From the NCBI GenBank assembly GCA_977016875.1, contig CDRNST010000011.1, positions 1,116,001 to 1,180,000 on the forward strand: a stretch of 64,000 bases of DNA. Reading direction: 5' to 3'. The translations under genes and the position numbers were made by a program. This DNA is from Pavona decussata (lineage: Eukaryota). Shown piece by piece: positions 1 through 51,849 of the stretch; the stretch's first letter is position 1, and each line of letters begins with the position of its first letter. The notes under the pieces are model-generated. The model had not been told where the DNA came from and made no database searches. It saw only the letters and a program-made list of their open reading frames with translations.

Positions 1-64
1 TCCTTCAGCCTAGAAAGTCTCAAAATGTGCTCAATTTCTGCAGCTACCTTTTGGAAAATCAGCT

Positions 65-2557: not shown

Positions 2558-2681
2558 TTTCTTAGCAATTCATCGGTATTACATTTTGATAAGTCAGCTT
2601 TTCGCTGTTGTTAGCTTACAAGACATTGTTGGCTTTTGGCTTTGGTCAAAATTACATTGCAACAATGTCATCAGAGAAACG

Positions 2682-28951: not shown

Positions 28952-31651
28952 GAGATGGAGACGATGTAAGAGAACTACTACTTGATTTAAAAGTCATGTT
29001 TAATAAACGATTTGTTAAAAAAAATCATTGGAAAATAAAAGAATCTCATGTTAAAATCATTGGAAAAAACAGGAAAATATTTGATACATTTGATTTGTTT
29101 TGTTTTGAAAGTGGCAGCTATTTTTAGTACGATTTTTGATATTTCAAACACTCAATATCTAAAATACAACTTTTGTTAGGGGGGGGGGGGTCATTCGGTA
29201 TCATTGACGTGGAAGGCATTTGACTGGAAATTAACATTGTTTGTTTGTTAACTTTGTTTTCTTAATTCCCAAAGCTCTTTTGCAAAGTAAGAGAATTTGT
29301 AATTGACGACATGCAATCCCGCAAGCAGAAGAAACTCTAAAAAATCGCAGGTGTTTTGCATAAAAATACTTCACATTATGTTTCCATTGATTTTCTTGAG
29401 AGAAAAACATTAACCCTTTCGACTGCTCCACCTTTCATATTTTCAGGTAATCAGGTTGCAAGATGAGCTATCGTTGACAAAAGCCAACCTGAATCAAACA
29501 CTGCTTCTTGAAGTGAACGACAAGTTGGTAGGTCCCAATTTTTCTGTCCAAACTGGTGTTCATCACTGACCTAGAAGCCGAGAAAGCTATTACAAACAGG
29601 CTAACATTCCCCAGAATACGGGAAGTCCAAGAAGCATTTCCCGAGTGCAAAGAGGCACTAGTAAAAAGACTAAAGATTTGTCAGGTAATTACCATAACTT
29701 GATAGCTGACATAACAAGCCAAACAAGTGTGGTACCCTGGAGTTACCAAGGATTGGCCACCCAAAGAGAACTAAACAAAAAGGAATTCAGCCCTAATACT
29801 GTAGTCATCTCGACTTCCTTTTTGATTACTATGTAATTTTAAACGTATTACCACAGTTTCACACTTAAACAATCTGGCAAAATTTCCTTCTCGTCAGGTT
29901 CAAGCCATATGGAATGACACTTCCACCCCTTACCGCACTTTCCCAACTGTTGTTACTTGGAAGGATACCAATTCATGCAATTAGGGATGCCGGACATGCT
30001 GTCTCTATTTGGGCCATCGACAACTTGGAAAAGTGCATGGCTAAATGATTCAGTAAGTCGGATTTTACTGATAAGAAACTGCTGATGCACAGTTATCTGC
30101 CATACACCAAATATGAATGGAGCAGGATTCACTCTCTAAATTTTTGGTTTCGCTTTTAAGCAACAAATGCAGAACAAATTTACTCCCTTTTATCTTTGTC
30201 AGTTTCTAATAGTCTCCTTTAATATAACAGGTTATCAATTCGTATATGGCAGTATTAGAAAAACTGGCTAACAAAAATGCAAGTATAAAATGACTGTAAC
30301 AGTCAATGTTGCCTCACCTCATGAGCGGCAAGTAAAAGTAGTTTAATAGCTTTCTTTTACAATTGCAGGGCAAGTTCGTAATCACTGCGAATAGTTGGAA
30401 AGGCCTGGTGCAAAAAGGTAAGTAGCTGACATACACATTGCATTCATACTACTTTGCACATGCAGAATCGATTTTTTTGAAAATTGGTAAACATAAGGTA
30501 TATGCAAGGGAAAAGGGGGCATCTAAATGTTGGTCATTTTACGGTAAGACTACTGTGTTCTTCTATGTTCAGTCTTAACTATCGGTCATGTAACAAAGAA
30601 AAAACTGTCATAGTTATTTATCAACCGATGCACTTTTTTGCAATGTCTGCTTATTGCAATTGGTTACAGCTTGACATTTCAGCATACAAGAAATGAGTGT
30701 TCCCCTGTTAGGCTACCCAGCAATATCATTGGATACTAGGCATAAGTATACTTAAGGGGAACTACGGGCTCAGATACTTAACCTAAACATAACCGCCACC
30801 AATAATAATCACCTTAGACAAACTGAAGTTTATTGCAATTTCTGGTACTTGCTCATCATTTTTAGTTTTACAAAAGAACCATGGACAATTTATCGTATAA
30901 CCAGGGACTTCCATCTGAAAAAGACGGTGATAAAACCCCCAATGGAGGCAACAGCTTTGGGTATGAATCAAACTTTATTTGATCCCTTGAAGGCACGATT
31001 TCAAAACAGACCGACCAATACATAAGAGCTATGGTGACCTAAATGGTAACAGCGACGTTGAAATGCCTAGACCACAATAACTATGAGAGTGCTTGTTGCT
31101 TTCCTTCCAATAGCATAATAAAAGTATTTGCATTCGACTTGTCTTGAAAATCTAAAGTGATCATTTATTATAATCCGTCATTTAGACTTCTAAGAGATGA
31201 CAAGCATATCGACTTACTTCTTTCATATGGGAGCCCTGTAAAGTGCCGAATCGAGTACCGTGCCGAAAACAGTATGACGCATAAATTATGACAAATTTAT
31301 GCATTGTGTAATATCCCCTCATTAAGCATGTCATCAAGTATCTAGACCTATCTGTTTCACGCTAACACAAGCTATCTAAGTATTAACAGAGTCAGATTAC
31401 TAAATTTCATTCCCTTATGCACGTAAATAGTTCCGGCGACAGGATAATTGAATTAAAGCCCTAGTAAACCAAAATATCATACTTCGTGGTTTTCTGTGTA
31501 CCTTTACACCATAGTCTAACATGGTTTAAAAGGGCTTTTCATTTAAGACAGGCCGAAATGACGCGGATAATATTTCTCTCATCACGCCGGTCACACGATA
31601 TGCAATTGATCAATCTTTCAGGGTCACGTTTTGACCCCCCAGATTAATACG

Positions 31652-32156
31652 TCACGTTCATGTAACAGCATGTCACGCATATGGTACACGCCTCAGTCAC
31701 GCCTTGCTCAAGCACGTAACTCGTTTCCTTAACGCAAATCCGAAAACGTGTTGTACGTTTAACTTTCTGATTCTGTGTAGATATACAATTATGTAACTAG
31801 CACTTGTCAATCAAATCCCTCGTGAGGTAAGCAAAAATAAAGCCAAAAGTTTGCTTAGCGCTACTCACATGTTTAACTTTATTCTTAAAAAAAAATTCTA
31901 AACAAAACGTACGTTTTTGTTGTGACAAAAGTTTGACCTTTACAATCACAATTTGAAATATCCCAATCAAGACAGGGAAACATTTTTAATGCATCACGTA
32001 CATGTAACAAACATGTCACGCATATGCAACACGCCTCAGTCAGTCCTTGCTAAAGCATGTGACTCGTTTCCTTAACACAAATCCGTAAACGTGTTGTACG
32101 CCCAGGTGTACGTTTCACCTTCTGTGTATATATACAAGCATGTAACTATCACTTGT
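31652..32156 (+). repeat. Two ~160-bp direct repeats upstream of the cargo gene (putative duplicated promoter/first exon)
   Basis: 31652-31810 is close to 31994-32156; GTAAG donors follow at 31827 and 32271. Confidence 0.75.
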
Positions 32157-32236
32157 ACATCCCAATTAAGAAAGACCAAGAAACGTCAAACGTCAGAAAC
32201 CTTCAAATTTACAAGCCTTCAGTTTACAAGTGAATC

Positions 32237-35200
32237 ATGAGTAACGAGAGGTCTACGACTACGACATCAGGTAAGTTTAAGCTATACGAAAATTTCCTTG
32301 CTGATGCGAAAATGTTATCGGATAGGATTGATATAAAAAATATCAAAAAGGGTCATAAATGTTTTTTTTTTTCGTTCAAGCTATAATACTTACATGGTAT
32401 TACTCCTATAATATTTTTGATATAAGTACGCTATCGTCATTGTTAAGGAGCTTCACATGTCTGAATGAAAAAAAAGTATTCCAAATTAATCAGAAAAGTA
32501 TTCCAAATTAATCAGAAAAAGAACAAAATATGTACTCTTGAGACTAAGATTACTCTACATAGTCCAATTTAAAAAAAAAAAACGACTTAAAAGTATTGTA
32601 GTGCCAGTACAATAGAGAACGAGGTTACGAGTTAGCTAACTTAACAGTCCGATTATTCGGTTCCAAAAAAAAAAAAACCACTGCGGTATATGTCGGTATT
32701 CTAGTGCGTGCCGAATAGACTGACGAGACTAAGAATAAGTTAATTCAACAGTCGGCAATCATTTTTATGAAAAATAAACTGAATATGTTTGTATTCTAGT
32801 GCGTGCTGAATAGAGTACGAGATAGAGACTAAGTTAACACTACAGTCGGCAGTCATTTTTATGAAAAATGTGTTGTATATGTTTGTATTCTAGTGCGTCC
32901 CGAATAGAGTACGAGATAGAGACTAAGTTATGCATACCGAATAGAGTACGAGATAGAGACTAAGTTAACACTACAGTCGGCAGTCAGTTTTATGAAAAAT
33001 ATGCTGTATATGTTTGTATTCTAGTGTGTGCCGAATAGAGTACGAGATATGGAATAAGTTAACTAGACTGTCGGCAGTCATTTTGATAAAAAATATGCGG
33101 TATATTTTTGTATTCTAGTGCGTGCCGAATAGAGTACGAGATAGAGACTAAGTTAACACTACAGTCGGCAGTCATTTTGATGAAAAAATAAGCTGAATAT
33201 GTTTGTATTCTAGTGCGTGCCGAATAGAGTACGAGAGAGACTAAGTTAACTCAACAGTCTGCAGTCATTTCGATGAAAAATATGCTGAATATGTTTGTAT
33301 TCTAGTGCGTGCCGAATAGAGTACGAGATATGGAATAAGTTAACTAGACTGTCGGCAGTCATTTTGATGAAAAATATGCGGTATAGTTTTGTATTCTAGT
33401 GCCTGCCGAATAGAGTACAAGATAGAGACTAAGTTAACACTACAGTCGGCAGTCATTTTGATGAAAAACATGCTGAATATGTTTGTATTCTAGTGCGTGC
33501 TGAATAGAGTACTAAAGACTAAGTTAACTCAACAGTCTGCAGTCATTTTTATAAAAAAAAATATGCTGTATATGTTTGTATTCTAGTGCGTGCTGAATAA
33601 AGTACGAGATAGAGACTAAGTTAACACTACAGCCGGCAGTCATTTTGATGAAAAATATGCAGTATGTTTTTGTATTCTAGTGCGTGCCGAATAGAGTACG
33701 AGATATGGAATAAGTTAACTAGACTGTCGGCAGTCCTTTTGATGAAAGATATCCGGTATAGTTTTGTATTCTAGTGCCTGCCGAATAGAGTACAAGATAG
33801 AGACTAAGTTAACACTACAGTCTGCAGTCATTTTGATGAAAAAATAAGCTGAATATGTTTGTATTCTAGTGCGTGCCGAATAGAGTACGAGATAGAGACT
33901 AAGTTAACTCACCAGTCTGCAGTCATTTTTATAACAAAATATGCTGTATATGTTTGTATTCTAGTGCGTGCCGAATAGAGTACGAGATATGGAATAAGTT
34001 AACTAGACTGTCGGCAGTCATTTTGATGAAAAATATGCGATATATTTTTGTATTCTAGTGCGTGCCGAATAGAGTACGAGATAGAGACTAAGTTAACACT
34101 ACAGTCGGCAGTCATTTTGATGAAAAAATAAGCTGAATATGTTTGTATTCTAGTGTGTGCCGAATAGAGTACTAAAGACTAAGTTAACTTAACAGTCGGC
34201 AGTCATTTTGATAAAAAATATGCTGAATATGTTTGTATTCTAGTGCGTGCCGAATAGAGTACGAGATAGAGACTAAGTTAACTCAACAGTCGTCAGTCAT
34301 TTTGATGAAAAATTTGCTGAATATGTTTGTATTCTAGTGCGTGCCGAATAGAGTACGAGATAGAGACTAAGTTAACTTAATAGTCTGCAGTCATTTTGAT
34401 AAAAAATATGCTGAATATGTTTGCATTCTAGCTAGTGCGTGCCGAATAGAGTACGAGATAGAGACTAAGTTAACTAAACAGTCGGCAGTCATTTCGATGA
34501 AAAATATGCTGAATATGTTTGTATTCTAGTGCGTGCCGAATAGAGTACGAGATATGGAATAAGTTAACTAGACTGTCGGCAGTCATTTTGATGAAAAATA
34601 TGGGGTATAGTTTTGTATTCTAGTGCCTGCCGAATAGAGTACAAGATAGAGACTAAGTTAACACTACAGTCGGCAGTCATTTTGATGAAAAACATGCTGA
34701 ATATGTTTGTATTCTAGTGCGTGCTGAATAGAGTACTAAAGACTAAGTTAACTCAACAGTCTGCAGTCATTTTTATAAAAAAAAATATGCTGTATATGTT
34801 TGTATTCTAGTGCGTGCTGAATAGAGTACGAGATAGAGACTAAGTTAACACTACAGTCGGCAGTCATTTTGATGAAAAATATGCAGTATGTTTTTGTATT
34901 CTAGTGCGTGCCGAATAGAGTACGAGATATGGAATAAGTTAACTAGACTGTCGGCAGTCCTTTTGATGAAAGATATCCGGTATAGTTTTGTATTCTAGTG
35001 CCTGCCGAATAGAGTACGAGATATGGAATAAGTTAACTAGACTGTCGGCAGTCCTTTTGATGAAAGATATCCGGTATAGTTTTGTATTCTAGTGCCTGCC
35101 GAATAGAGTACAAGATAGAGACTAAGTTAACACTACAGTCTGCAGTCATTTTGATGAAAAAATAAGCTGAATATGTTTGAATTCTAGTGCGTGCCGAATA

Positions 35201-38200
35201 GAGTACGAGATAGAGACTAAGTTAACTCAACAGTCTGCAGTCATTTTTATAACAAAATATGCTGTATATGTTTGTATTCTAGTGCGTGCCGAATAGAGTA
35301 CGAGATATGGAATAAGTTAACTAGACTGTCGGCAGTCATTTTGATGAAAAATATGCGGTATATTTTTGTATTCTAGTGCGTGCCGAATAGAGTACGAGAT
35401 AGAGACTAAGTTAACACTACAGTCGGCAGTCATTTTGATGAAAAAATAAGCTGAATATGTTTGTATTCTAGTGCGTGCCGAATAGAGTACTAAAAACAAA
35501 TAGCATTATTTTAATATATTCCAAAAATTGTATTTTCTTTTTCTCCGAAGGATAAAGAAGAAGTGAAAGGTTTACCGCATAGCTTTTGTATCTGTGGTTT
35601 ACCTGCAACAAAGAGGTAGTTAATATATCATTTCTGTTTTTCTGATTGTTACTACAAGAATCAGTGACATTAAATGGTGTGTCCTCTTTTTTTATGCAGA
35701 GATGACACAGTTAAGTGTCAGTTAAAATATCCTGGTTGTCAAAAAGTGTTCCACACTGCCTGCGTAGGATTTGAGGGCCAGGCTGACACTTCTTTCATCT
35801 GCAAGCACTGTGAAGGTAACTGTTGTTTACAAGCTGCGGATATAATGAACTTCCTTATATTTCCTTTTCGAGACAGATAGACTCATTCTCTTCTTTGTCT
35901 TCCTTCTTTCCAGGAGAGGAAAGAGATCTCCCTTTTTGGAAACGGTGTGAAACTAAAACGATAAATCAGGTGAGTAGGAGTGGAATGATTTTAAAGATTT
36001 AGGAAACGTGCTTCTTATGCCATCGTTCCAACTCCCTTTTCCATAGGTGAACCAGTTGTTCGCAGAGGCAATGGATGGTGATACGCAAGAGCGAACGCTC
36101 CAGTGTGGCTTGAGCCTTGCCGATATTAAGTCTCTTTTACCAGGAGAAGATTTGAATGACAAGGTTTGTGATAGAAAGTTAAAAACTGCTCCACAAGAGC
36201 ATACTCTAACGTTAAGTGTCGAACCGGTTTTCTCAGCGTAAATTAAATCTGGTGCTACCTCATTTTAGTTACCTCATTTTAGTTACATCATTTTACTTTT
36301 GAGTGCAGTAATTAAGAGATATTAGAATTGACAAATGTCTCATTATGTATTTTTTCAGGTTATAAACTCATCACTCGCATTTTTTGCAGAAGAAATGGCT
36401 GCAGAGGTAAAGTAGGTGATTTAATGGGATAATTATTAAATGCTCCACAACGACGCACATTGCCCATGCAATTGATAAATGTCCTCTTTACTCTACTTAT
36501 CACATAATGTTTTTTTCCATTAACATGTACTGAAATTGAGGACAAAATTAACACGAAAACAAATTTATTTCGAAGGGAGCTACTTTGGCGTGCTATTCCT
36601 CTCATCTCCTGCCGAAGTTTCGACGCGACGGATTCATACAAGGGCACATGGGCCGCTGGTTCATGAAGGTAAGAAGTCATTGAATTCCACCTGATAGGTT
36701 GAGGTTTAAACCCTCTACAAATAGGAAACTAACTTTCGATCCTTCACGCAGATTAACCCCTTTGAGAGCGAGTGGATTATCATCCCAGTTCACGCTCCAG
36801 GACATTGGACAATTGCGGTAGGTATTAGTTAAATATTTACATTATACACGCAAAGTACATAAATTAAAAATATAACATACAATGGTAATAAAAAATAACA
36901 AACAATCTGAATTGAGAAATAACACTGATTCGCAGCCGGAGATCTTTCAAGATGATCCCAGCTGAATATTAATCAAAGATAAATTTACAATGTTATGATT
37001 CCTAATGAAAAAATATCACAACTTCCATTATTTTGCCAATTTAGGTGATACACGTTCCCGAAAGTACAATTTATTGGTACGATTCCATGAACCAAAAGAA
37101 CAACCAGGCCAAAGAAGATATAACAGCTATCAAGTAAGATTGTTTTACAAGGAAAAAAACCGTAAACACTATTTAACTCGAAGTGATTAAGATGAAAATA
37201 ACAAAGCTATGTTTTTTTAAGGCACATTTTTTGGATGGCAGCACATGAGCTAAGAACGGACGCTGATCCAACAAATTGGAAGGTAGCAAGACCTACCGAT
37301 GAAGGGGTGAGGGAAGATACACATATATACAATACCTTCAAGTGTTTATTGATTAGCAGTGGGAAAAATGAAAAGAAAACCTTGGAAAGGAAATTTTAGA
37401 CGTGGGCAATGCAAACAAACGTTTCTTTTTGCAAGCCACCGAAACGAAAGAATTTTTTTTTTCATATAAGCCCCTTGTTCCATTAGTCGTTATTGGCAGT
37501 ATCTTCACTGTATGAAAGACATCCACAATCATACGGTTTAAAAGGAGCTTGACTCAAAGAAAGCAGAATAATTAGAGTAAAACATTGTTTTTACAAAAAT
37601 ATAAGGACCAGTAATTAAAAAAATATGTAAAAATATACCATTGTACTCTGAGAAAATCTACTTAACTCTCGGACATATTCCACGTTCTCTTAAAACGTAA
37701 TGGGACACTAACTCCCCACCCCACTCCTCGTTGGAGGTACGAATTAGTTTCCATGTTTAATACACTAGCTAACACTAAGATAACATGGTTTCCTTTCAGG
37801 TCATTCCTCTACAGACATACGGAAATGACTGTGGAATATTCAGCTTAATGGTAATTATCCTCTTTGTCTCTGCCGAAGGGTGCATCTTAGTTTTCTACTA
37901 GCCAACTGCTAAGATATTTGCCATTCATGACAAACATTTCATACTTTATTTCAGTATGCTATATATAAAGTGAGGAACATCAAGTTTGACTTCACTGTGG
38001 TAAGTTATTCTTTGAGGCAAATGACTTGCTGAGATGCATGAAACGTTTCGGCGAGGCGGCAAGTATTCACTTAACGGACTTGGTGCCAATTCCTTTCAGA
38101 ACGACATGCCCACAATTCATCGCTGGATTGCATCAAATATCGTAAAAGTGGAAGTGTCAATGCAGACAAGGTACGTTATTGTAGGGTGATTGTTGTCTTC

Positions 38201-41036
38201 CTTTATATTTTCAATAAAAAAACCGCTCAATTCGATAAATTTGCGTATTTTAGAAATGAGAAATGCCATGGCCCCGCTGAAACGGAACATGAAGATGTTG
38301 CAGATATAGTTGAGTTGGAAGCAAATGCAGAAGAATTGGAGCCCCTAAAGCTCCCCCCAGTAAGCCAGGAGCGACTTATTGCGATTGATAAGGAGAAAAT
38401 CACGAAGGAGCAGAAGCCCACTGCTGGGAAAAAACTTCCTCGCAAAAGGAAAGAGCTAAAGAAATGTGAAAATTTTACAAGATCAAAAAGAAACTGGTGG
38501 TGTAACGTGGGCGCTACATTACTCTTTTTGTAGGTTGCTGCTGGGTCAAAGGGGCCATCCAAGAGAAAGAAAACTGCAACTGAAACAACAAAAACGCCCA
38601 CAAGAAAGAAAAGCAAGAAACAGATTGACAAAGAGCAAAGGTATGTATTGTTTTACTTTACGTATTCTACCTTGGGTAATGTTGTACAGCACTTCGTAAG
38701 AAAGGAGAACTAAAGAAATAGTATTCTTATATCTTCATAAGGGCAAAATTCCTTGAATATATGAACAACCTGGAGGACACGGCTGTTGGAGGAAAGCCAA
38801 CGGAGACGATAGAGGAGCTTATGAAAAAAGTAAGGAACTACTGCAGAAGCCTATATCAACACATGTAATTAGAACTGCTTAGTGTCTATTTTGTCGATAA
38901 GCAGTTTAGGACACCATTAGGATCCTTGATGTGTACTTTCTTATGACTACCAACAAAAAAAAAATAGAGGACGTCGCAAGTTCTAATCATCCCTATTTGT
39001 GCCTATTAGGTGGAATCAATGAGACCACAACTCGTTGAAATAGCATCGACTCCACGGTAAGTAAATAATTAAATACTACCATTGTCATTTTAGATATGAT
39101 CGTAAATTATGGTAAGAAACAAGGTGATAAATTTTTAAAAAATCATTTCCTCATTATGGAAAACCGTTCTAGGCAAAAAGAAACGGAGCAGTTAACCTTG
39201 CATAGTCCAATAGAAATATCTGACACGTACTGTAATCAATATGTCCATGAGAACCATTGGAACCCTGTTGATGTGACCCTAACAGCAAAGTGTCACATCA
39301 AGACTTTACTGAACTATGCAATAACTTGAAAAGTTGATCACAATAGAAACGGGCCCACTGGCTATTCGACTGGTCATTTTTAACTTAATAGGATAACCAC
39401 AAGGATCCAAAAAGGTGGTGAAAATTAGGGGATGACTGGACTTAAGACTGATGTTAAATGTGTTTAATTTTATTTATAAGAGTATTCGTATGGCGGAGTT
39501 CCAGAGTATTTGGAATTAATGATAAAGCCAGGTCGTTTTGCATCACGAATTTCCCTTCATTATGAGTTGCATACTGTACATCCCATAGCTGAATTCAGAC
39601 TAATCTAATCCTCTTGCTCACTAGTTCTACCACACGACCAAAGGAAAGGTACCAGAGGCACCAGGCGTTCCTTAATTTATCAAGGAGAAATTTCCACAAA
39701 CATCAGATGTTTGAATTTGGAATAAAATACTTTGGATTGGATTATTACATAGAGGTAAGCGAGCCAAGATGCGCGGACTATGCCCAAAGCACCGCGAGGC
39801 AAATCAGATATTAATTCAGTCACCCTACAGTACAGTTGAGATAAGAGTACGTTGTGAAAATCACTCTAGTTAACAAACTGAAAAAAAAGACGCTTTACTT
39901 TATCGGTCATTCACAAGGCAAAGCTTTTTTCGCAACAATTAACTTCCAAAAACTATGGTATTGTTTTCAACTTTTTCTTAGCTGTTTCATGTCAAAAACG
40001 AATCTTACCGTTGTAACGGTAACTGTATAGAAAAAAAAGGTACTAGTACGACTACATTAGCTGTTGAAATTTACAGACGTCAAGAAGAGAAAGGGCTATG
40101 ACAAATAAGCAAAAGCAACAAAAAACAAAACAAAAAAAATTCAATTCTGGTAATTCTGGTTCCTACCTTTTTATTTAAAATTTTCAGTTGAAGATGGCAG
40201 TCATTGACAAAATAGAGGACATGTTCACCAAGCGAACATCGCAGAAGCCTGGGTATGTACCTCACTTACATTTCCAGTCCCCGTAACTTAAATCAGCAAT
40301 GCTAGTTCAATTATGTATGGAATGTCATTTTTCCAATTTTACAGGACCCTGTGGCTGCCACCAACGTTTTACATCGATCTTCCACCTTCAATGGACCCGT
40401 ACGGCTTGGAAGGGAAATAGTAAGTCCATAATTATTGATCTAGCCGTAGCCACCACTTTCCTTTTCACATAGTTTCCCGGTGTGGCTTATGGTATTTTAG
40501 GTAACCCATAGGTTGTCTTCAAAACTAATACAATTGTTTCTTTCTGCAGCTATATAATGGAGGTCCTTGCCGAGGAAGCAGTTACAATTTTAATCATGGA
40601 GCGAGAAAACTGCGGTTATGAGACTGCTACGGGTCTAGCGTTTGGACATGACCAGCCGTTAAATACCCTGTACTATGAGAAGTGGTACGAACTTCTTCCA
40701 AGAGCAAGAGTACCGTCCATGGCACATGTGCAGGCTCGCGCAGCATATGACGTGAAAGTGAAGGACTTCCTTCAGAACACGCCGCTCAAAATCAATTTTG
40801 GTGATGTGCCATGGCCATGCGATGGAACAGCACAAGATATGGTTGCCGTCATGCTGTCAGGGGAGGACAAGGCAACCAAACGGAAAAGGATCAAGGACCT
40901 TGTCCTCTTCTGGCATCCAGACAAATTTTTTTCCCGCTATGACCGCATACTCGCCGAGAACGATCGGGAACTGACAACTGATTTAGTTCTCGATATTTCT
41001 AAAGAACTTTCTAGGGTTCTAGAAGAGGAAAGATGA
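32237..41036 (+). CDS. Spliced (~22 exons) PHD finger + Ulp1/SENP cysteine protease + MUM1-like + NFKBIL1-C-terminal-like protein
   Basis: Manual GT-AG splicing gives an open frame: CICG..C..C..FHTAC..CKHC (35558-35815); LNDK|VINS; IIIPVHAPGHWTIA (36752-36817); IYWYDS (37045-37133); PLQTYGNDCGIF (37800-37850); basic KRKK/RKKSKK stretch; last exon DVPWP...WHPDKF; AATAAA near 41055. The first exon join is the least certain. Confidence 0.85.
32690..35494 (+). repeat. Intronic tandem array, ~30 x ~94 bp, three unit variants, higher-order structure
   Basis: Consensus GTATTCTAGTGCGTGCCGAATAGAGTACGAGATAGAGACTAAGTTAACACTACAGTCGGCAGTCATTTTGATGAAAAATATGCTGAATATGTTT. Confidence 0.97.
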
Positions 41037-43635
41037 GCAGACTGAACACTCAAAAATAAAAAGCAATATAGCGTATTTTCTATTTGGTTAGATTCATTTC
41101 AATACAACTGGAAATTCATTACAAATTTCAGACCACTAATTTCTCGCAAAATGGCGTTATCATTGCTATTTGTTTTGCCTTTCATAAGATTTTCATAGGA
41201 ACGACAAGTTAAATCATTCATTATGAATGTGCGTTGTAGAAGTCAGATTCGATGAGAAAAGATAAAACAGTAGCAGAATAACGTGACAAATTGTCTGATC
41301 AGTCTGCCTGTCAGTTCCTACGTGTCTTCTGGTTTTTGACTCTTGTGCTGTTAAGATTAAAGTTTTCGACCTAGTATACCTCAGGCTTTTGCTGATAGGA
41401 CTTACATTCTGTAGTTTTAATTTTAGTAGGAGACTGACAAATGAACGAAAGGTTTCTTTAGTTTGAATTTGTTACAGTTAGATTTAAGAAATAAAACACT
41501 GTTTTGTTGCCGTAAAATGTCTGCTCTAGTCTTTGTATCGCAAGCCCACGTAAAAATATGTGCAATGACGTTTTTTCCTGTATTAATCAAACTACTAAAT
41601 GGCGTTGAGCTGTGGTTAAATTTAGTTTCTTAAAATATCATCCTGAATAGAAAATGCCGTAAGCTTATAGTAGCTGTCGTGACCTATGGCGAGAAGGTCA
41701 TCAATTCCGGTATTTCGCAATTCGACATAATTTATGCGTCATACTGTTTTCGGCACGGTACTCGATTCGGCACTTTACAAGCCCCCCCATTTCTTTCCAT
41801 AAATAAAATGTCATTCAGGAATTTATCTCGTTACATTTTACTAAATAAAGTTATAGACAGGATAACATTTGTTAATTCCTTGCTTTCTTAGGTCATACAC
41901 TTGCAAAACTGTACAATTTCCCAAGTGGATCTGGCAGGGAGGAGAAGCCCAGAATTCTTCGACGTAGTTCGGTACAAGATATACTGTCACTTGTGAAAGT
42001 AACTTGCACTCAAGATAAGTTTGCATCAATCTCAGATCTAACAGGCAAACTGGACCTATTCACATTCATTATGCTCTGTATTAATTTCACAATTTCCTTG
42101 CAAGGGACTTCCTAACTAAAAGGAGCGAGCTTAAGGGACGTCACTGAACTGACGTGTTCGTAATGAAGATAATCGTTTAGACTGTGATTCGTTTTCTTAA
42201 TACTTGAACCAAAAATTACCATGGATATGGTTAGACTCTGACAGGCATTAGTTAAAGTCACTTTTCTTTCTTAGATCATGGAGTGCATTACAGAAAGAAA
42301 GGAAATCGCTTTCCAACACGTGTGTCTTAACTGAAATACTGTACTTCTTTCACCTAATTAGTTTTTAAATGTCATCACTACAATGTCAGCAATAACAGAA
42401 CAAGACATTCAATCAATTTTTCTGTGCCAGGCATTTTATCCCAACGAGCCGACTGCAGCTATAAATTGAGACTGATGGTCATTTTGCAAGGGACCAGTTC
42501 CTTGGCGATCCTTAACTCTTAACTGGGGTGCAAATATAGTTCTCTCCGCAAATGAAGTCAATTGCGCAATTCTGCATAAAGTCAGTAAATATATCTACTT
42601 TGTCTTACCCTATAGCATAAAATTGATGACTACAGATGGCAGATTGTCTACAGGCTGCTCAATGATGGCAACTGGTAGACGGTTAGACTGCAACTATTTT
42701 GGTCAGGTGTCAATGGCTTATAGGATGGTAAAAACTTTGTATACTTCAAAGTGGTTGACAAGTCGAGCAGAGTTTCTGCAAAATGTTTGTAAAAGCCAGC
42801 ATATCTTCAAAAGTCTTACAGTGTCTCCAGTTAATGTGCTTACTAGCCTGAATAAAATGAACAGTGGCAGATCGTTGTAATAGCAAGGATTTATCCCGCA
42901 TACAATTCATGATATGCACAAGATGGTGGCTCACAAAAGCACATGGCCAACTAATCCAACATCTCCTCTCAAAGTTTGAGTGCTAACTTTGTGTACACAG
43001 TTCGGTACACACATTCCTTTGCTTTTCTTGAAAAGCGTGTTGAAATGGAATCGCCTGAGAGAGGAAAATTTCAGTGCAAAGGAATTTTGCTCTCCTGCTC
43101 ATGTGATCTTCCAGCGCAGTGCTTTCTTTGTAATAGTATGCAATACAATGGAGAGAACGGCTGCTGGAAATCTCTACAGCCTGGACAAATTGTGCGAAGG
43201 GGCGTTCGCGGACACAGTAGGGCATTTCTCTACCAAAATGACAATCCTAAAGGACTGCTAAGAACTTCACAAGGCGTTCGAGAAGATGCAATTGGAGCAG
43301 CTACACTCCAGCAACAAGATGGTTTTTTTTTATTTTATTTTATTTATTTAGTTTGCCCAAAATCAACATCTTTTACTATATTTCATTCATCACTGAAGCA
43401 ACAGCATTGAGCAGGAAGTCTCAGAAGCCTTTCAAGGCTTATCGAGGAGACCCCCCTTACTAACTGTTACTAATAACTCTGGCGATATATGAAATCATCT
43501 TAATCTACATTAAATTATAAATTCCTATAATAGGGCAAGGAACGAGCTACAACTAAAATATACTAATAACATCAAAGAGATCAAGAGAAAAAATCCTAAT
43601 TAGCGAAGAGTAAAAAATACAAGAATTGTTTGTAT

Positions 43636-45017
43636 CTATACTTGATTTGTGAGGATAAAGTTTTTTAGTTTTCGTTTAAAAGTTGATTGACATCTGGTTT
43701 TTTTAAGATCACTTGGCAAGTTATTGAATACATCTACTCCCTTATAGCTTATACTAAATTTTCTTATATTTGCTTTGATTAAAGGCTTGTGTAATTTTTT
43801 GGTTGATCGTGTATTATAATTATGCACATCTTCATTAGTCCTGAAAATGTTCTTCAAAGAAGTAGGTAATTGATTATTTATGAATTTTCTTGTTAATATG
43901 GCAATAGTCTAATCATTAATTTGATATACATTCAGTATCTGAAACTCATCAAATAATGGTTTTAAGCTATAATTGTATTGTTTGAAAGTCATTATCCGTA
44001 CAATTTTCTTTTGTAGTTTATATATCCTGTTTAGATGGGATGGGTATGCATTAGCCCAAACAATATTTCCATAATAAATATAGGGATAGATTAAAGCATA
44101 ATAAATTGATTTCAGCAAAGATTTAGTTATATAATGCCTTGCCTTCAGAATATTCCTGTACATCTTGATATTTTGTTTGCTACATAATTGATGTGTTCAG
44201 TCCATTTCAACTGTTCATCAATTATTGTTCCAAGAAATTTTGTATGTTGTACTTGAGTAATACAATGGTCTTCTACCTTAATTCTTAATTTATGATTCAT
44301 TTTCTTCCTTGATGATTTAAATAGCATAAAGTTAGTTTTTGTGAGATTGAGTGATAATTTGTTTAATTGAAGCCAAATGGTTACTTTTTCTAATTCTTCG
44401 TTTATTTTGGCTATCAGTGTACCCAGATTTTTATGAGACATTAACAAATTAGTATCATCTGCAAAAAGAACTAAAGATAATATGTTCGAACTATTACAGA
44501 TATCGTTAATGTAAATTAAAAACAGTAGTGGCCTGAATCCATATTGGTGACTACTGAGTACACATATTTTGTTTAAGTAATTCAATAATCGTTTGTACAT
44601 CATTTTCTCTAATACTTTAGAAAAACAAGGTAACAAAGATATATGTCTGTAGTTTGTGAATTCACATTTGTCTCCTGTCTTGTATACTGGAATAATAATC
44701 GAAGTTTTTAAGTCTACAGGTATCTTACCAGTAATAAAAGTGAGATTTATAATGAATGATAACAGTACACTTAGTTCTGATGCTAATAGTTTAGCTACCC
44801 GGGGCATGATATTATCATGTCTGCAGCTTTTTGATGGGTCAAGATTTTCTAATTCTCTCTTAATTTCCTGTTCACAAACAGGTGATAACAGCATCGAAAC
44901 CATAAAACTTCCCTTCAAGTAATCTTTGAATGATAAATTAGTATTGGTTGTTATCTTCTTAGCAAGGTTCGTTCCAACGTTAACAAAATAATCATTGAAC
45001 ATGTTAACGATTACCTT
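43636..45017 (-). pseudogene. LINE ORF2 RT part with internal deletion and frameshifts
   Basis: NYRHISLL, QYGFR fused directly to PLLFLIYIND, LFADDT, KFLG. Confidence 0.9.
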
Positions 45018-48000
45018 CCTGTTGGTATTTAACGTAATGCGCCAAGATGGCAGCACGCTTTTGGAATTTGCTCTACCTTATTGGGGTCTTTAATCAACTT
45101 ATTCCAAGGTCTCAGTCTCCCATTACCAAGTTGCAAAGCAATAAGAACTTCTGCTACCTATTGAGTATCAATGGGGAATCCAATGCACTTGGTACACGGA
45201 ATTTTCCTCCTTTTCCTGGCCCACTTTTCAGGCCGTCATTGAAGCGCATCGAGTCTTCAGTCCATGCAATCAACTACTCGATTTCAAAACTCAGCAAACA
45301 TGGAAGCACAGCGCTCATACTTCCTGGTCGGTTATTCTGGATTGACCTCACGATCCACATGGATATTCAATGCAACCCAGGACCTGAAAGGCTGGAAAAC
45401 TCTCAAATAAACCATCTGCAGCCATCGGATAACAGCTCCCGAAATTTGACTAATCGCGCTTCAAACGCCATTAAATATTCAAGATCTGAGCTACTACAAC
45501 TGCGGTTACGGCAATTTAAAATCCCAGACGAAACCTTCCATTTGCTGAAAAACAATGGAATATTGAGAACACGAGGAGTTCGCTCTGGTCAGGCCGTCTG
45601 AAACCGTAAACATAATATTGCAATCTCTCATGTTCAGTGGAAACCTGACAACACAAAACCTGGCGAGAGAGGAGTTAATTTGCATAACCTATGCTCAGTA
45701 AAGTGCGTTAAAGAAAACAAACAACCTTCCAAAGCGCCCGGTGGGCTTGAAATCCTTCATTTGAATATTAGATCGCTAAAAAATCGCGCTCACTTGCTTG
45801 AGCTACGACAACTTGCATCTGAAAGGAAAAGCGGCATCATTACAATCTCTGAAACATGGCTCAATACCACCATCACTTCAGCAGAGATACAAATCGAGGG
45901 TTACAAATTACACAGGTTAGATCGACTTCACAAAGGAGGCGGGCGGAGTAGGTGCCTATGTCCGCAAAGATCTCAAATCATCTGTACTGAAGGAGTTGTC
46001 ATCGATATCCGAGCGAAATTTCCATCAGCTTTGGATAAATGTCCAGTGCAAGAAACTAAAATCAACTATAATTTGCGTTACATATCGCCCCGACGACTCT
46101 CCTCTGAGTTCCTTCGAAGAAGTACTTAAGCCCAACTATATTCAAGCCCTGCTGTTTGACAAACCGATCACAATCATAGGCGATCTAAACTGCGATGGCC
46201 TCAAGAAAACAGGCCCTGAATTCAAAGCTCTGGAGAAATTCTATACGGATATGAACCTGAAACAACTCATTACAAAACCAACCAGGATAACATCGACCAC
46301 TCAATCCCTGCTCGACGTTATCCTAGTCTCCTCCAACAATTCAGTGCGAGACAGCGGTGTAATACATCGACCAATTAGTGACCATTCAATTGTCTTTGTC
46401 AAGCTCAAGGTTAAGAAACCCAAGACTACTCCTCAGTACATAACCACTCGAAGTTACAGGAAGTATAATGCGGATCTCTTTGTCATGGATCTAGCTAATG
46501 AAGTGGACTCCCTGCTCACTATCTTCGATCAAACCGATGTAGACTCTAAGCTTAATATTTTAAATGACACTTTGCAGTCTGTCCTGAGCTTACACGCTCC
46601 CGTGAAACAAATTAAACTTCGGAGTAGACCGTGCCCTTTGTGAACCAGGAAATCAAGGATCTCATGAGATCGCAAGATCTCCTCCTGAAGCAATTCATAC
46701 AGTCTCGCCAAGACACCGAGTGGATAAATTTCAAACATTCCCGGGACTTGGTCAAGAAAAAGCTACAAGAGGCTGAAAGAGATCACACCTTTGAAGAGGT
46801 CACAGCTAATAAAAACAACTCTGGCTCACTCTGGAAAATTATTAATCGCGCCATCCCCTCCAAAGATAAGCAGAGACTAGCCTTTACAAAGGATGTGACA
46901 GTCTTAACCTAGGAATTCAATCAGTTTTTGCTAAACTCGGCTTAAATGCCGCTGACGCAGTACAGCGCCTGAGGGAAGAACATAACATCATAGTCCGAGA
47001 TTTTTCAACCGAAACTGGCATAGATACTACCTCTATGGAATTATTCAATTTAAGGACAGTGTCACTCGAAGAGGTTCGCCGAATTGTAACATCTCTCCCA
47101 ATGAATAAATCTCCGGGACCGGATAAGATCAGCGCTCGTGTACTAAAAGACTGTCTCCCTGTCATACTGGGCCCTCTTACTGACATCATCAATTGTTCTA
47201 TCCATACTAGCTCATTTCCTGACAACTGGAAAGAGGCTGAGGTGATTCCGATTCTTAAAGACGGTGACCATGAAAAAGCTGCCAACAACAGGCCGTTATC
47301 TCTGCTAGCCGTAGCTTCAAAGGTCCTCGAAAGGATTGTTTTGAATCAGTTTAGCGCCTACCTCACGAAAAACAATCGCCTTACCTCACACCAAAGCGGC
47401 AATAAAAAAGCTCATTCTACAGAGACCTTAAACATCCTGCTCACGGATAAGATACTCGAAGCAATGGATAAAAAGCAGATAACAGCACTAGTACTATTAG
47501 ATCTATCCAAAGCCTTCGACAGTATAGACCATGCAAGGTTGCTCCACAAACTCTCCATGTTAGGAGCCTCACCCTCTACTGTCAAATGGTTCAAGAGCTA
47601 TTTAACTGGTCACAGGCAATACGTGAGAATTGGCTCCATCTACTCTGACACTCTACCTATAACTCACGGAGTTCCTCAAGGCGCAATTCTATCACCATTG
47701 TTGTTCTGCATTTATCTCAACGATTTACCCACGTCACCGACGTTTTGCAACCTAGAATCGTATGTGGATGACTCAAAGCTATTCATGTCATTTCCTCTCG
47801 TTGAGGTTGATGCTGCCATTGAAAAGCTCGAACAAGACCTTCACAGTGTAGCTCAATGGTGCTGTGAGAACCATCTACTTATCAATCCCGATAAAACTAA
47901 ACTCCTTTTCCTCGGTACCAGACAGATGTTAAGCAGGTTACCAGAAGACCCTAGAGTGGTATTCTTAGGTAAAACACTGAAGCCAACAGACTCTGCCAAG

Positions 48001-48757
48001 GACTTGGGAGTCTTTCTTGACCCCCATCTGACCTACGATCACCATATTTCATGTGTAGTGTCATCTTGTTTCGCAAAGCTCTGCCAAATAAATAGAGTCA
48101 AAAGGAGCTTCGACAAGGAAACACTAGAGTTGTTAATAACATCATTAGTTTTTAGCAAGATGCTTTACTGCTCATCTGTATGGTCTAATACTACACTCCA
48201 GAATATAAACAGATTACAATCTATTCAGAATTTTGCCAGCAAGATCGTAACAAACTCTAGGAAGTTTGACGACGTAACACCTTTGCTTCGAGAGCTAAAC
48301 TGGCTTCCTGTTAAAGAACAATTATTCTATAGAGACTCCGTTTTGACCTTTAAATGTCAGAACGATCTTGTGCCTCAATACTTAACGAGCAAGTTTACCA
48401 AGCGCTCAAATATACATACTCGTAACACACGTACACGGAACTCTTTGCAGATTCCGCTATACAGAACGGCTATAGGCCAGCGCACATTTTCCTATAGAGG
48501 GGCCTACATATGGAATAACTTGCATAATGAACTTAGGCAAAGTGCCTCATTGGCATCTTTCAAACGCACCCTGAAAGACACACTATTGAGGCAGACATTT
48601 CCTTCATAAGCTTTAAATTTTAGTAAAATACCAGCATAAATTGTGATCTCGAGTTTTTATTGTCATTTTTGCTTTTATAAATTGGAAATAGTTTGTAAAT
48701 AGTTCCTGAAAAACCTCACGAGGATGTTACTATTAAAGTTATTTATTTATTTATTTA
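45018..48757 (+). mobile_element. L2/CR1-group LINE nested in opposite orientation; one long ORF (2A-like, APE, RT) now broken
   Basis: HLNIRSL, SETWL, YRP, GDLN, SDH, LDLSKAFD, GVPQG, YVDD; (ATTT)n tail near 48740-48757. Confidence 0.93.
47035..48609 (+). CDS. Reverse transcriptase domain of the nested LINE (open segment)
   Basis: 524-aa ORF containing all the main RT motifs. Confidence 0.9.
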   Translation: MELFNLRTVSLEEVRRIVTSLPMNKSPGPDKISARVLKDCLPVILGPLTDIINCSIHTSSFPDNWKEAEVIPILKDGDHEKAANNRPLSLLAVASKVLERIVLNQFSAYLTKNNRLTSHQSGNKKAHSTETLNILLTDKILEAMDKKQITALVLLDLSKAFDSIDHARLLHKLSMLGASPSTVKWFKSYLTGHRQYVRIGSIYSDTLPITHGVPQGAILSPLLFCIYLNDLPTSPTFCNLESYVDDSKLFMSFPLVEVDAAIEKLEQDLHSVAQWCCENHLLINPDKTKLLFLGTRQMLSRLPEDPRVVFLGKTLKPTDSAKDLGVFLDPHLTYDHHISCVVSSCFAKLCQINRVKRSFDKETLELLITSLVFSKMLYCSSVWSNTTLQNINRLQSIQNFASKIVTNSRKFDDVTPLLRELNWLPVKEQLFYRDSVLTFKCQNDLVPQYLTSKFTKRSNIHTRNTRTRNSLQIPLYRTAIGQRTFSYRGAYIWNNLHNELRQSASLASFKRTLKDTLLRQTFPS

Positions 48758-50022: not shown

Positions 50023-50373
50023 ACCTTGATACTGATGATATTTTCAAGTCTGACATACCTGAGTTTTGATTAAAAGGATCGAACACTAAATTCTTTAAAC
50101 TATCATTATCTTTCTGAAATATTTGTTGTCTAGTATCGAGTGTAAATAGATCAGTGAACTCAATATCTTCTATTTGTGTAAACCGTATTGATTGTTGTGA
50201 ACCAGCACGGGTTACATCTTGATCAATTAAGACATTCGAACAATTAACGTGGAGGTTTATACCACATTTTTCACAAGAATTTTGTTCTCCACTTATTTGT
50301 CTATTACAATGAAAACAAATGAATTGTATTATAGTTCATAATTTACAATAAAATCTGATCTACTTTACACTCT

Positions 50374-51207: not shown

Positions 51208-51849
51208 ATACCTTTATCTAACGTTTATTTGAACGTGATTAAGGTATGTTCTATGCTTTGTATCATTTTCGTTGTCGGCTAAAGATTTACATCTGAATGT
51301 TGTGCCATTTGAACAGTAATCTGCAATGCGAAAACGAAGCACTCATCGGCCGTGCTCGAAGAATTTTTGAATGTTACATGCTATATTGTCAATGGAGATG
51401 AAGGACCATCAAGGCTTTCTTCGCTACAGCATTTTGACTTAATTAGGTGTATGGCAATTGACTACATGCACAGAGTCATTCTCGGTGTACAGAAACTACT
51501 TTTAACCTTGTGGTTTTGCTCAAACTTCTCAAAGCAAAACTTAAGCATATCCTCTTAAGTAGACACCATTGATTTTAGGCTGAGCCAGATTTTGCCACCT
51601 TCTGAAAATAAGCGTCTTCCCCTTTCCATTGCCTACTATTTGAAGTACTGGAAAGCAAGTGAACTACGCTCATTTCTGCTTTATTACAGCCTACCAACCC
51701 TTTGTGGCCTTTTACCAGATAATTACTTTACACATTACACGTTATTTGTCCAAGCTATTTACATTCTTTTGCAAGATTCAATTTCTGAAGCTGATTGTCA
51801 ATGATGGAGCCTAGGAATTTCACAGAGGTCTAGAAAAACTGGCATTTCT

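What the first reader, a model, noticed from the sequence alone, without database searches (positions are those of the whole stretch)
35558..38170. Hidden, catalytically complete Ulp1/SENP domain spread over tiny exons
Seen: about 12 exons of roughly 45-120 bp splice in phase with no stops. They give a PHD finger and a C48-type protease with His (GHW), Asp (YDS), oxyanion Gln and Cys (PLQTYGNDCG). The usual W of WLND is replaced by D (EDLND). Known: SUMO takes part in transposon silencing. Inference: a chromatin-targeted deSUMOylase, possibly with altered substrate specificity.
Basis: partly seen in the sequence, partly recalled or inferred. Interest (0 to 1): 0.72.

Follow-up and report, generated by a model that had tools for sequence, protein, structure and literature searches.

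The report
Transposon-borne PHD–Ulp1 protease exons
The tiny exons are real and encode a PHD finger plus a Ulp1/SENP-type cysteine protease with all four catalytic residues, but they belong to an internally deleted copy of a Ginger-like DNA transposon, a known kind of transposon cargo, not to a host chromatin regulator.

Summary
Twelve + strand exons (35551-38170, 45-117 bp) all have AG/GT borders and read in phase without stops. Contigs of three RNA-like runs carry matching GT..AG joints; a DNA run carries none.

- **Domains, exon by exon:** exon 2 hits PHD. Exons 7, 8 and 10 (His, Asp, Gln+Cys) match a C48 profile in order. Exon 7's only solved-structure matches are SENP2.
- **Transposon context:** the exons lie in a 10,543-bp element (31237-41779) with 61-nt TGT..ACA inverted repeats and a 5-bp target duplication.
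- **Full-length relative:** an ENA contig, 98% identical over 6.3 kb, carries the same exons after a 94-bp array, a 783-aa rve integrase ORF and OTU exons.
- **State of this copy:** 5.7 kb is missing (integrase, OTU, the upstream exons), no Met precedes the PHD, and one later splice donor reads CT.
- **Expression:** the RNA contigs carry the full-length copy's letters and its upstream exon. They prove the splicing for the family, not transcription here.
- **Other copies:** all six others in this assembly are broken.

Ulp1 (+PHD) in Ginger1 transposases was published in 2010. New here are OTU with Ulp1, the 5-bp duplication and about 20 exons. DeSUMOylase activity and the W-to-D claim are untested.

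The parts
31232..31236 (.). Left copy of the 5-bp target-site duplication (AGCCC)
   Evidence: The same 5 bases follow the right end. Three other copies also have 5-bp duplications (AGCAC, GGTCT, AGGCC).
31237..31297 (+). Left terminal inverted repeat, starting TGTAA
   Evidence: (69-nt arms, 93% complementary), and (the 74-nt end is 100% identical in C330, C274 and C233).
31298..32160 (+). Left backbone of the element, shared with the other copies
   Evidence: 85-90% identity to C274, C330, C233 and C7.
32688..35490 (+). 94-bp tandem array (about 30 units) whose units carry a TIR-like GTGCCGAAT..GAGTAC motif. It is part of the transposon backbone.
   Evidence: Arrays occupy the same place in C274, C330, C7 and the ENA contig L045.
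35490..35495 (.). Internal deletion junction. About 5.7 kb of the full-length element is missing here: the integrase ORF, the OTU exons and the upstream exons.
   Evidence: Window 35495-41779 equals L045 9822-16094 at 98.1%. The array in L045 ends at 4136.
35551..35615 (+). Exon 1: first Cys pair of the PHD finger (FCICG)
   Evidence: joint 35615|35700 in X1 and X2.
35700..35815 (+). Exon 2: rest of the PHD finger
   Evidence: (PF00628, E 2.8e-4, 21.3 bits, cut-off 24).
35914..35969 (+). Exon 3: linker
36047..36163 (+). Exon 4: presumed start of the C48 domain (EDLND). It is skipped in one isoform.
   Evidence: joints 35969|36047 and 35969|36359. No significant exon-wise match.
36359..36406 (+). 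Exon 5
36576..36668 (+). Exon 6
36752..36817 (+). Exon 7: catalytic His (PGHW)
   Evidence: the only PDB matches are SENP2 (E 0.11), aligned on the HW; 8.7 bits at profile positions 11-31, reached by 0 of 500 shuffles.
37045..37133 (+). Exon 8: catalytic Asp (YWYDSM)
   Evidence: 9.6 bits at profile positions 34-52, reached by 0 of 500 shuffles.
37222..37306 (+). Exon 9: variable insert between the Asp and Gln boxes
   Evidence: 0.3 bits at profile 64-81, collinear but not significant. (joint 37133|37222).
37800..37850 (+). Exon 10: oxyanion Gln and catalytic Cys (LQTYGNDCG)
   Evidence: 11.9 bits at profile positions 90-104, reached by 0 of 500 shuffles.
37955..37999 (+). Exon 11
   Evidence: loose end joining to exon 12.
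38100..38170 (+). Exon 12: end of the C48 domain
   Evidence: Intron 12 is seen retained in contigs of X1 and X2.
38254..38455 (+). Exon 13: acidic then Lys-rich linker. Its donor at 38456-38457 reads CT in this copy and GT in the full-length copy.
   Evidence: (joint 38453-5|38532-4).
38534..40419 (+). Exons 14-19: 38534-38640, 38742-38829, 39010-39056, 39625-39754, 40188-40252, 40345-40419
   Evidence: joints, (frame stays open; all AG/GT).
40550..41036 (+). Last coding exon, with stop at 41034-41036. No Pfam family. It is shared with the integrase-bearing copy C330.
   Evidence: no family; 700 codons open from 35551.
41719..41779 (-). Right terminal inverted repeat
41780..41784 (.). Right copy of the target-site duplication (AGCCC)

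Best explanation
Window 35551-38170 holds twelve genuine coding exons. They encode the PHD-finger plus Ulp1/SENP-type (C48) cysteine-protease module of a Ginger-like, integrase-type cut-and-paste DNA transposon.

The full-length element is seen 98% identical in an ENA contig. In order it reads: left end, 94-bp array, integrase (rve), OTU protease exons, PHD, C48 protease, Lys-rich linker, a C-terminal domain of unknown family, right end.

The window copy (31237-41779, 5-bp target duplication) is a young internal-deletion derivative. It lost the integrase, the OTU exons and the upstream exons. It kept the PHD-C48-C-terminal exons as an open 700-codon frame.

Shown here:
- the exon structure and its splicing in the family;
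- the transposon boundaries and the deletion;
- conservation of the four C48 catalytic positions.

Inferred:
- The protease removes SUMO or another ubiquitin-like modifier, or cuts after a Gly-Gly-type site, in the service of the transposon. The PHD finger would bring it to histone tails.
- This copy has no start codon upstream of the PHD, no upstream exons of its own and a changed donor after exon 13, so it probably makes no full protein by itself.
For: - Exon chain and phase.
- GT..AG joints in X1, X2 and X3 and none in DNA run X10.
- PHD hit for exon 2.
- Exon 7 matches only SENP2 among solved structures, on the catalytic HW.
- Exons 7, 8, (9) and 10 align in order to a profile built from 18 PF02902-positive domains of the same genome. 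E-values are 1e-3, 5e-4, (0.38) and 1e-4. None of 500 shuffles reach the scores of exons 7, 8 and 10.
- Inverted repeats and 5-bp duplications in four copies.
- Backbone shared with C330, C274, C7 and C233. C330 carries an rve ORF (E 1e-13).
- ENA contig L045 has array, a 783-aa rve ORF (E 2.6e-16), OTU exons (E 3e-6 and 1.6e-8), then the same PHD-C48 exons and the right inverted repeat at 98.1% identity. It also holds the exact 30-mer of the RNA contigs' upstream exon, which is absent from the window.
- Ginger1 transposases with Ulp1, and Ulp1+PHD, are published: PMC2836005.
Against: - No Pfam-level score for C48 was obtained.
- The N-terminal half of the domain (exons 4-6) has no significant exon-wise match.
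- At the seven diagnostic exon positions listed, the RNA contigs carry the letters of the full-length copy (38119, 38132, 38155, 38299, 40725, 40944, 40975). Transcription of this copy itself is therefore unproven.
- Constraint is weak. Exon versus non-exon divergence to L045 is 1.14% versus 2.25%, and pN/pS is 0.71 from 16/6 changes.
- No enzymatic data exist for any transposon-borne C48 domain in the papers read.
- Whether integrase, OTU and PHD-C48 form one protein or two is not known.
Confidence: 0.8

Rival explanations
1. A host gene for a chromatin-targeted deSUMOylase: a cellular SENP-family member with a PHD finger, acting in transposon silencing.
For: Intact catalytic residues and a PHD finger. 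Spliced RNA exists.
Against: - The exons lie between inverted repeats with a target duplication.
- Seven loci in the genome carry the exon chain, and six are broken.
- The full-length relative has integrase and OTU upstream inside the same inverted-repeat-bounded unit.
- This copy has no upstream exons and no Met before the PHD.
- The 38-aa PHD exon found no protein relative in 1.84 billion representatives. This is weak evidence, because so short a query has limited reach.
Confidence: 0.04
2. An exapted or trans-acting derivative. The deletion copy is kept because it still supplies the PHD-C48-C-terminal protein, to the transposon family or to the host, driven from the element's left end or from a neighbouring promoter.
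For: - It is the only copy in this assembly with all exons open.
- The frame is open for 700 codons across 20 exons.
- Exons diverge at half the rate of introns.
- One minor RNA contig over exon 4 differs from the window by a single letter (record 2).
Against: - The element is only about 2% from the full-length copy. An open frame is therefore expected by chance: about 12 substitutions on this branch, each with a chance of a stop estimated at about 5% (my own rough figure).
- pN/pS is 0.71. On the branch to the window copy 7 of 9 exon changes are non-synonymous.
- No 5' exon or start codon was found.
- The donor of exon 13 reads CT.
- The RNA letters are those of the sister copy.
Confidence: 0.1
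3. A host gene fragment captured by a non-autonomous transposon (Pack-type transduplication), with the TIR-less paralogues (C90, C1, C350, C157) as the source gene.
For: Homology to those paralogues starts exactly at the end of the array. None of them has the TIR motif within 20 kb.
Against: In the ENA contig the same exons are contiguous, at 98%, with array, integrase, OTU and the right inverted repeat in one element. The breakpoint is therefore a deletion, not a capture. The paralogues also carry the OTU exons and look like old decayed copies of the same full-length type.
Confidence: 0.03

Closest known systems
Ginger1 DNA transposons with C-terminal Ulp1 (and PHD) domains, e.g. Ginger1-9_HM of Hydra (Bao, Kapitonov & Jurka 2010, PMC2836005)
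   Same: Gypsy-type integrase (rve plus H2C2-like zinc domain) in the full-length copy. Inverted repeats of tens of bases that start TGTNR. A Ulp1 protease domain with a PHD finger in the same element. Spliced transposase genes.
   Different: - The target duplication is 5 bp and not CCGG/CCGT (4 bp in Ginger1).
- OTU and Ulp1 occur together; the paper states that a Ginger1 transposase has one or the other, never both.
- The PHD-C48-C-terminal part alone has about 20 exons, against 0-4 introns.
- There is a kilobase-scale internal array of 94-bp units with a TIR-like motif.
- The window copy has no integrase.
SENP2/SENP1/Ulp1 SUMO proteases (peptidase family C48, PF02902)
   Same: Order and local context of the His (HW), Asp (DS), Gln and Cys (DCG) boxes. 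Exon 7 aligns to SENP2 residues 96-116 of chain 5aek_A across the catalytic HW.
   Different: - No significant similarity outside the catalytic boxes at exon level.
- From my own recall of the family, the first tunnel Trp (WLND) appears to be Asp here. This was not tested.
- It is fused to a PHD finger and is transposon-borne, not a conserved single-copy host gene.
- The substrate is unknown.
Ginger2/Tdd transposons (TDD-4, TDD-5)
   Same: Integrase-type transposase, TGTNR ends, and a 5-bp target duplication as reported for TDD-4/5 (PMC2836005).
   Different: No protease domains are reported for Ginger2. Ginger2 of Nematostella prefers AT-rich RTATAY targets, whereas the targets here are G/C-rich (AGCCC, AGCAC, GGTCT, AGGCC).
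ULP1-like domains in plant Mutator-like and CACTA elements (cited in PMC2836005; rice ULP expansion, PMC12903978)
   Same: A C48 domain carried and amplified by cut-and-paste DNA transposons. Its function in transposition is unknown.
   Different: A different transposase superfamily and a different kingdom. No OTU partner and no integrase.

Membership tests
Peptidase C48 (Ulp1/SENP, PF02902) | His, Asp, oxyanion Gln and nucleophile Cys in that order, in the conserved HW / DS / Q..DCG contexts | tested here: met
   Exons 7, 8 and 10 align in order to the conserved H-W, D-S and Q..D-C-G columns of a profile built from PF02902-positive domains of this genome. None of 500 shuffles reach these scores. 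Exon 7 aligns to the HW of SENP2.
Peptidase C48 (Ulp1/SENP, PF02902) | Score above the Pfam gathering threshold over the domain | tested here: inconclusive
   Single exons give no PF02902 hit. The locus is not among 105 six-frame candidates in the genome. The joined protein was not scanned.
Peptidase C48 (Ulp1/SENP, PF02902) | N-terminal subdomain with the WLND Trp that forms the Gly-Gly tunnel together with the HW Trp (established knowledge of SENP/Ulp1 structures) | tested here: inconclusive
   Exon 4 reads EDLND followed by VIN in exon 5. No exon-wise alignment reached significance, so the W-to-D equivalence is by eye only. The second Trp (HW) is present.
Peptidase C48 (Ulp1/SENP, PF02902) | SUMO (or other Ubl) C-terminal hydrolase or isopeptidase activity | not testable with these tools
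   Needs a biochemical assay.
PHD finger (PF00628) | C4-H-C3 zinc ligand pattern | tested here: met
   Read from exons 1-2: C-x-C-x12-C-x6-C-x4-H-x2-C-x12-C-x2-C.
PHD finger (PF00628) | Pfam score above the gathering threshold | tested here: inconclusive
   Exon 2 alone gives E 2.8e-4 and 21.3 bits against a cut-off of 24. The first Cys pair lies in exon 1.
Ginger1 transposons | Gypsy-like integrase (zinc finger plus DDE core) | tested here: not met
   The window copy has none. It is present in sister copies: C330 (rve E 1e-13) and L045 (rve E 2.6e-16, H2C2 E 5e-4). The family has the feature; this copy is non-autonomous.
Ginger1 transposons | Inverted repeats of 40-270 bp starting TGTNR | tested here: met
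   61-nt inverted repeats starting TGTAA.
Ginger1 transposons | 4-bp target duplication, CCGG or CCGT | tested here: not met
   5-bp duplications in four copies: AGCCC, AGCAC, GGTCT, AGGCC.
Ginger1 transposons | Extra OTU or Ulp1 protease domain (one, not both) | tested here: not met
   Both OTU (PF02338) and the C48 exons are present in the full-length element L045 and in the old copy C90.
Host SENP-type gene | Single-copy cellular gene outside mobile elements, with its own first exon and start codon | tested here: not met
   It lies inside an element bounded by inverted repeats and a target duplication. Seven loci carry the exon chain. The window has no upstream exon.

The most novel reading that the evidence does not exclude
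The full-length element encodes two different ubiquitin-like-modifier proteases (OTU and C48) and a histone-reading PHD finger beside a Gypsy-type integrase. This could be a transposon-borne 'de-modification' module. It would strip SUMO or ubiquitin marks from silencing or repair factors on the element's own chromatin or at the integration site. The window's deletion derivative is the only copy in this assembly with the PHD-C48 exons intact. It might persist as a trans-acting supplier of that module, or be on the way to host co-option.
Probability: 0.12. Interest if true: 0.7.

Novelty: new variant of a known kind. Interest (0 to 1): 0.4.

Why it matters
Transposon-borne Ulp1 and OTU proteases have been catalogued since 2010, but none of the papers read here reports a tested function. 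This family is young: its ends are identical between copies and its copies are about 2% apart. It is transcribed and spliced, and it combines OTU, PHD and C48 in one element. That would make it a practical system for asking what such proteases do for a transposon, for example counteracting SUMO-dependent silencing, helping repair after excision, or self-processing.

For annotation, it shows that a complete protease domain can escape both six-frame domain scans and gene callers when it is cut into 45-117-bp exons. It also shows that such a 'hidden gene' should be checked for transposon ends before it is read as a host regulator.

Tried and rejected
- **Whole-genome six-frame PF02902 scan,** at default and at E 10. 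The locus is not listed because its exons are too short.
- **Exon-wise Pfam**. Only the PHD finger was found.
- **Exon-wise PDB searches** for exons 4, 6 and 8. Nothing relevant; only exon 7 hit SENP2.
- **A profile that includes N-terminal columns**. Exons 4-6 remained unplaced.
- **The big protein search with exon 2**. It returned no annotated protein, only a read-through ORF, but that ORF led to the ENA contig.
- **The 'captured host gene' idea,** which I held. One search rejected it.
Exon-wise tblastn of the whole window gave only noise outside 35.5-38.5 kb. The apparent C48-like words at 44.7 kb lie in a reverse-transcriptase ORF.
- **Upstream exon of the RNA contigs.** It is not in the window. 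In the assembly it occurs only in old paralogues, with one mismatch each.
- **Search for a young full-length copy in this assembly** using the OTU-linker region. None was found above 96%.
- **Empty-site search with the flank of the ENA element**. The flank is repetitive, so no answer.
- The exons were joined only inside scripts, to check phase and stops.
Full report
**1. The observation**

Reading 35000-38800 and locating the borders by script gives twelve + strand exons:
- 35551-35615, 35700-35815, 35914-35969, 36047-36163
- 36359-36406, 36576-36668, 36752-36817, 37045-37133
- 37222-37306, 37800-37850, 37955-37999, 38100-38170

Each is preceded by AG and followed by GT. The phases are compatible and there is no stop. 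Introns are 77-493 bp.
- PHD-type Cys/His pattern in exons 1-2
- PGHW in exon 7
- YWYDSM in exon 8
- LQTYGNDCG in exon 10
- EDLND in exon 4

The true start is the acceptor at 35550/35551, not 35558.

**2. Splicing evidence**

Contigs of three runs that the tool guesses to be RNA (X1, X2, X3; two studies) carry GT..AG joints at e1/e2, e2/e3, e3/e4, e5/e6, e7/e8 and e8/e9. Loose ends fit e4/e5, e6/e7 and e11/e12.
- A second form joins exon 3 directly to exon 5. That in-frame skip removes exon 4.
- The DNA run X10 has none of these joints.
- The intron-only bin 37495-37694 has zero depth in all three RNA-like runs.
- Joints e9/e10, e10/e11 and e12/e13 are not among the rows printed.
- Intron 12 is seen unspliced in contigs of X1 and X2. 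If read through, it would end the protein a few codons after the protease domain.

Further joints (38455|38534, 38640|38742, 38829|39010, 39056|39625, 39754|40188, 40419|40550), plus one inferred from a loose end (40252|40345), extend the gene. The result is a 700-codon open frame ending at 41036.

**3. Domain identity, exon by exon**

It was assembled only inside scripts, to check the frame.
- Exon 2 alone hits PHD (PF00628, E 2.8e-4, 21.3 bits, just under the 24-bit cut-off). The first Cys pair lies in exon 1.
- No single exon reaches PF02902.
- A six-frame PF02902 scan of the 602-Mb genome lists 105 segments but not this locus. 'Hidden' is therefore apt.
- I built a profile from 18 PF02902-positive domains of this same genome and searched each exon on its own:

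| Exon | Bits | E-value | Profile positions |
|---|---|---|---|
| 7 | 8.7 | 1e-3 | 11-31 |
| 8 | 9.6 | 5e-4 | 34-52 |
| 9 | 0.3 | 0.38 | 64-81 |
| 10 | 11.9 | 1e-4 | 90-104 |

- The four exons align in order, on the conserved H-W, D-S and Q..D-C-G columns. None of 500 shuffles of exons 7, 8 or 10 reaches the observed score.
- Against all solved structures, exon 7 matches only SENP2, across the catalytic HW (E 0.11).
- Exons 4-6, the presumed N-terminal subdomain, could not be placed. The EDLND motif is conserved in all paralogues, so it is ancestral to this family.

**4. Context: a transposon**

*Boundaries.* The exons lie inside an element with 61-nt terminal inverted repeats (31237-31297 and 41719-41779, starting TGTAA). 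It is flanked by a 5-bp duplication, AGCCC.

*Other copies.* The same ends occur elsewhere in the genome, with the 74-nt end 100% identical in three places. Three further complete copies have 5-bp duplications of their own: AGCAC, GGTCT and AGGCC. All share:
- a left backbone (31237-32160);
- the 94-bp tandem array (32688-35490);
- a right backbone, from about 40500 or 40800 to 41779.

Copy C330 carries an integrase core ORF (PF00665, E 1e-13).

*My first reading, later rejected.* Six other loci match the exon region at 81-96%, and only C68 of them carries the inverted repeat. At first I read the PHD-C48 exons as a captured fragment of that TIR-less multicopy gene.

*How it was overturned.* The search of 1.84 billion protein representatives with exon 2 found only a spurious 96-aa read-through ORF. 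The contig encoding it is ENA ERZ25073805 ctg131050 (117.6 kb). It holds a full-length element, read here as locus L045:

| L045 coordinates | Content |
|---|---|
| 1-4136 | 94-bp array |
| 4326-6677 | 783-aa ORF: rve (E 2.6e-16) plus a weak H2C2 zinc domain |
| 7333-7629, 8123-8506 | Two OTU exons (PF02338, E 3e-6 and 1.6e-8) |
| 9822-16094 | Equals window 35495-41779 at 98.1% over 6.3 kb, up to and including the right inverted repeat |

The window copy is therefore an internal-deletion derivative. About 5.7 kb (L045 4137-9821) is missing, and the junction lies at 35490/35495. C330 is a different deletion derivative that kept the integrase and lost OTU-PHD-C48.

**5. State of this copy, and whose RNA it is**

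*Broken copies.* All other copies of the exon chain in this assembly are broken:
- C90 has a stop at the W of GHW.
- C68 has stops in exons 6 and 12 and lacks exons 7-9.
- C1a, C1b and C350 have stops in exons 4 and 6 and lack exons 7-12.
- C157 has stops in exon 2.

The window copy is the only open one. It still has three defects:
- No Met precedes the PHD finger.
- It has no upstream exon.
- The donor after exon 13 reads CT, where the full-length copy has GT.

*Source of the RNA.* The RNA contigs splice exon 1 to an upstream exon whose last 30 bases are absent from the window. In the assembly those bases occur only with one mismatch, in old paralogues. They occur exactly in L045. At the seven diagnostic exon positions printed (38119, 38132, 38155, 38299, 40725, 40944, 40975), the RNA carries the L045 letter. 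The RNA therefore validates the exon structure of the family, but it comes mainly from full-length sister copies that this assembly lacks. Transcription of the window copy is not shown.

*Constraint.*
- Window versus L045: exon divergence 1.14%, non-exon 2.25%.
- Exon changes: 16 non-synonymous and 6 synonymous, pN/pS 0.71.
- On the branch to the window copy, polarised with older paralogues: 7 of 9 exon changes are non-synonymous.
- At about 2% divergence an open frame is expected by chance, so intactness is not evidence of selection.

**6. Mechanism**

*Shown.* A spliced transposon gene carries a PHD finger and a C48 domain with all four catalytic positions. In the full-length element it lies downstream of an integrase and an OTU domain.

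*Inferred from family knowledge.* C48 enzymes cut after the Gly-Gly end of SUMO-family modifiers. PHD fingers read histone H3 tails. Bao et al. (PMC2836005) proposed that the OTU and Ulp1 domains of Ginger1 transposases act in the ubiquitin/SUMO pathway during transposition or repair.

*My best guess (about 50-60% given that the domain is active).* It is a Ubl-deconjugating enzyme recruited to chromatin for the transposon's benefit. Self-processing of a multidomain precursor is the alternative, as in adenoviral or Polinton clan-CE proteases. The exon-4-skipped isoform would lack the start of the protease domain and is probably inactive.

**7. Comparison with what is known**

Ginger1 transposases with Ulp1, and one with Ulp1+PHD, were described in Hydra in 2010. 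The element here differs in five ways:
- The target duplication is 5 bp and not CCGG/CCGT.
- OTU and Ulp1 occur together; the paper says never both.
- The PHD-C48-C-terminal part alone has about 20 exons, against 0-4 introns.
- It carries a long internal array with a TIR-like motif.
- Its C-terminal exon has no known family.

It fails two Ginger1 criteria and is best called Ginger-like. It is a new variant of a known kind, and the protease module itself is a known kind of transposon cargo.

**8. Verdict**

The host-deSUMOylase interpretation is replaced by a transposon protease module in a deleted, probably non-functional copy. Interest is moderate (0.4).

The scan had already noted this same DNA as an integrase-less Ginger-like element (s1-504711). 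I tested that note independently and extend it with the full-length relative.

Noticed in passing
window 35969|36359 (exon 4, 36047-36163, skipped): RNA contigs of X1 and X2 show an in-frame isoform that joins exon 3 to exon 5. It removes the 39 codons that hold EDLND, the presumed start of the protease domain.
   Followed up: partly
window 38171-38253 (intron 12): Contigs of X1 and X2 run unspliced through intron 12. Read through, it gives a stop seven codons after exon 12, which would yield a protein ending right after the C48 domain. These contigs differ more from the window (6 letters and 3 gaps in 268), so they may come from another copy or from pre-mRNA.
   Followed up: no
window 38456-38457: The donor of exon 13 reads CT in this copy and in DNA run X10. 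It reads GT in the full-length ENA copy, and the RNA contigs are spliced at this place.
   Followed up: partly
L045 4326-8506 (ENA ERZ25073805 ctg131050): The full-length element combines an rve integrase ORF (783 aa) with OTU exons and the PHD-C48 exons. Bao et al. 2010 state that Ginger1 transposases carry OTU or Ulp1 but not both. It is not known whether the integrase ORF is spliced to the OTU exons.
   Followed up: partly
L045 about 12650 (equivalent to window 38350): The ENA copy has two extra C in a C-run in exon 13, which would shift the frame. The RNA contigs show no gap there, so it may be a homopolymer error of that assembly.
   Followed up: no
G000 C1:117000-137000, C1:394000-414000, C350:30000-50000: The old broken OTU-PHD-C48 copies sit in a repeat unit of more than 20 kb, shared at 91-97% between three loci. 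A piece equal to window 39948-40759 lies inverted 8-9 kb downstream in each.
   Followed up: partly
L032 (G000 C90), minus strand 7747-7896 and neighbours: A CCHC zinc knuckle (PF00098, E 2e-6) and a duplicated 1.1-kb segment with a coiled-coil ORF lie upstream of the OTU exons of the C90 copy.
   Followed up: no
L045 7680-8100 and L045 16099-16830: Two short high-copy repeats. A unit of about 400 bp lies inside the OTU region, with dozens of copies at 85-95% in G000. A unit of about 735 bp flanks the right end, with more than 30 copies at 97-99%. The second shows that the ENA contig comes from the same or a very close species.
   Followed up: no
window 44145-54744: Downstream of the element lie fragments of non-LTR retrotransposons: RVT_1 ORFs at 44148-45056 (-), 47035-48606 (+) and 53800-54741 (+), and endonuclease ORFs at 48754-50022 (-) and 45996-46640 (+).
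   Followed up: partly
P0001 (protein database entry, 96 aa): The only database protein matching the PHD exon is a prokaryote-style ORF call. It reads from intron 1 through exon 2 into intron 2 and is not a real protein.
   Followed up: yes
window 40550-41036: The last exon (161 codons, containing WHPDKF) has no Pfam family. It is shared with the integrase-bearing copy C330 at 92%, so it is the common C-terminus of the element's coding capacity.
   Followed up: partly
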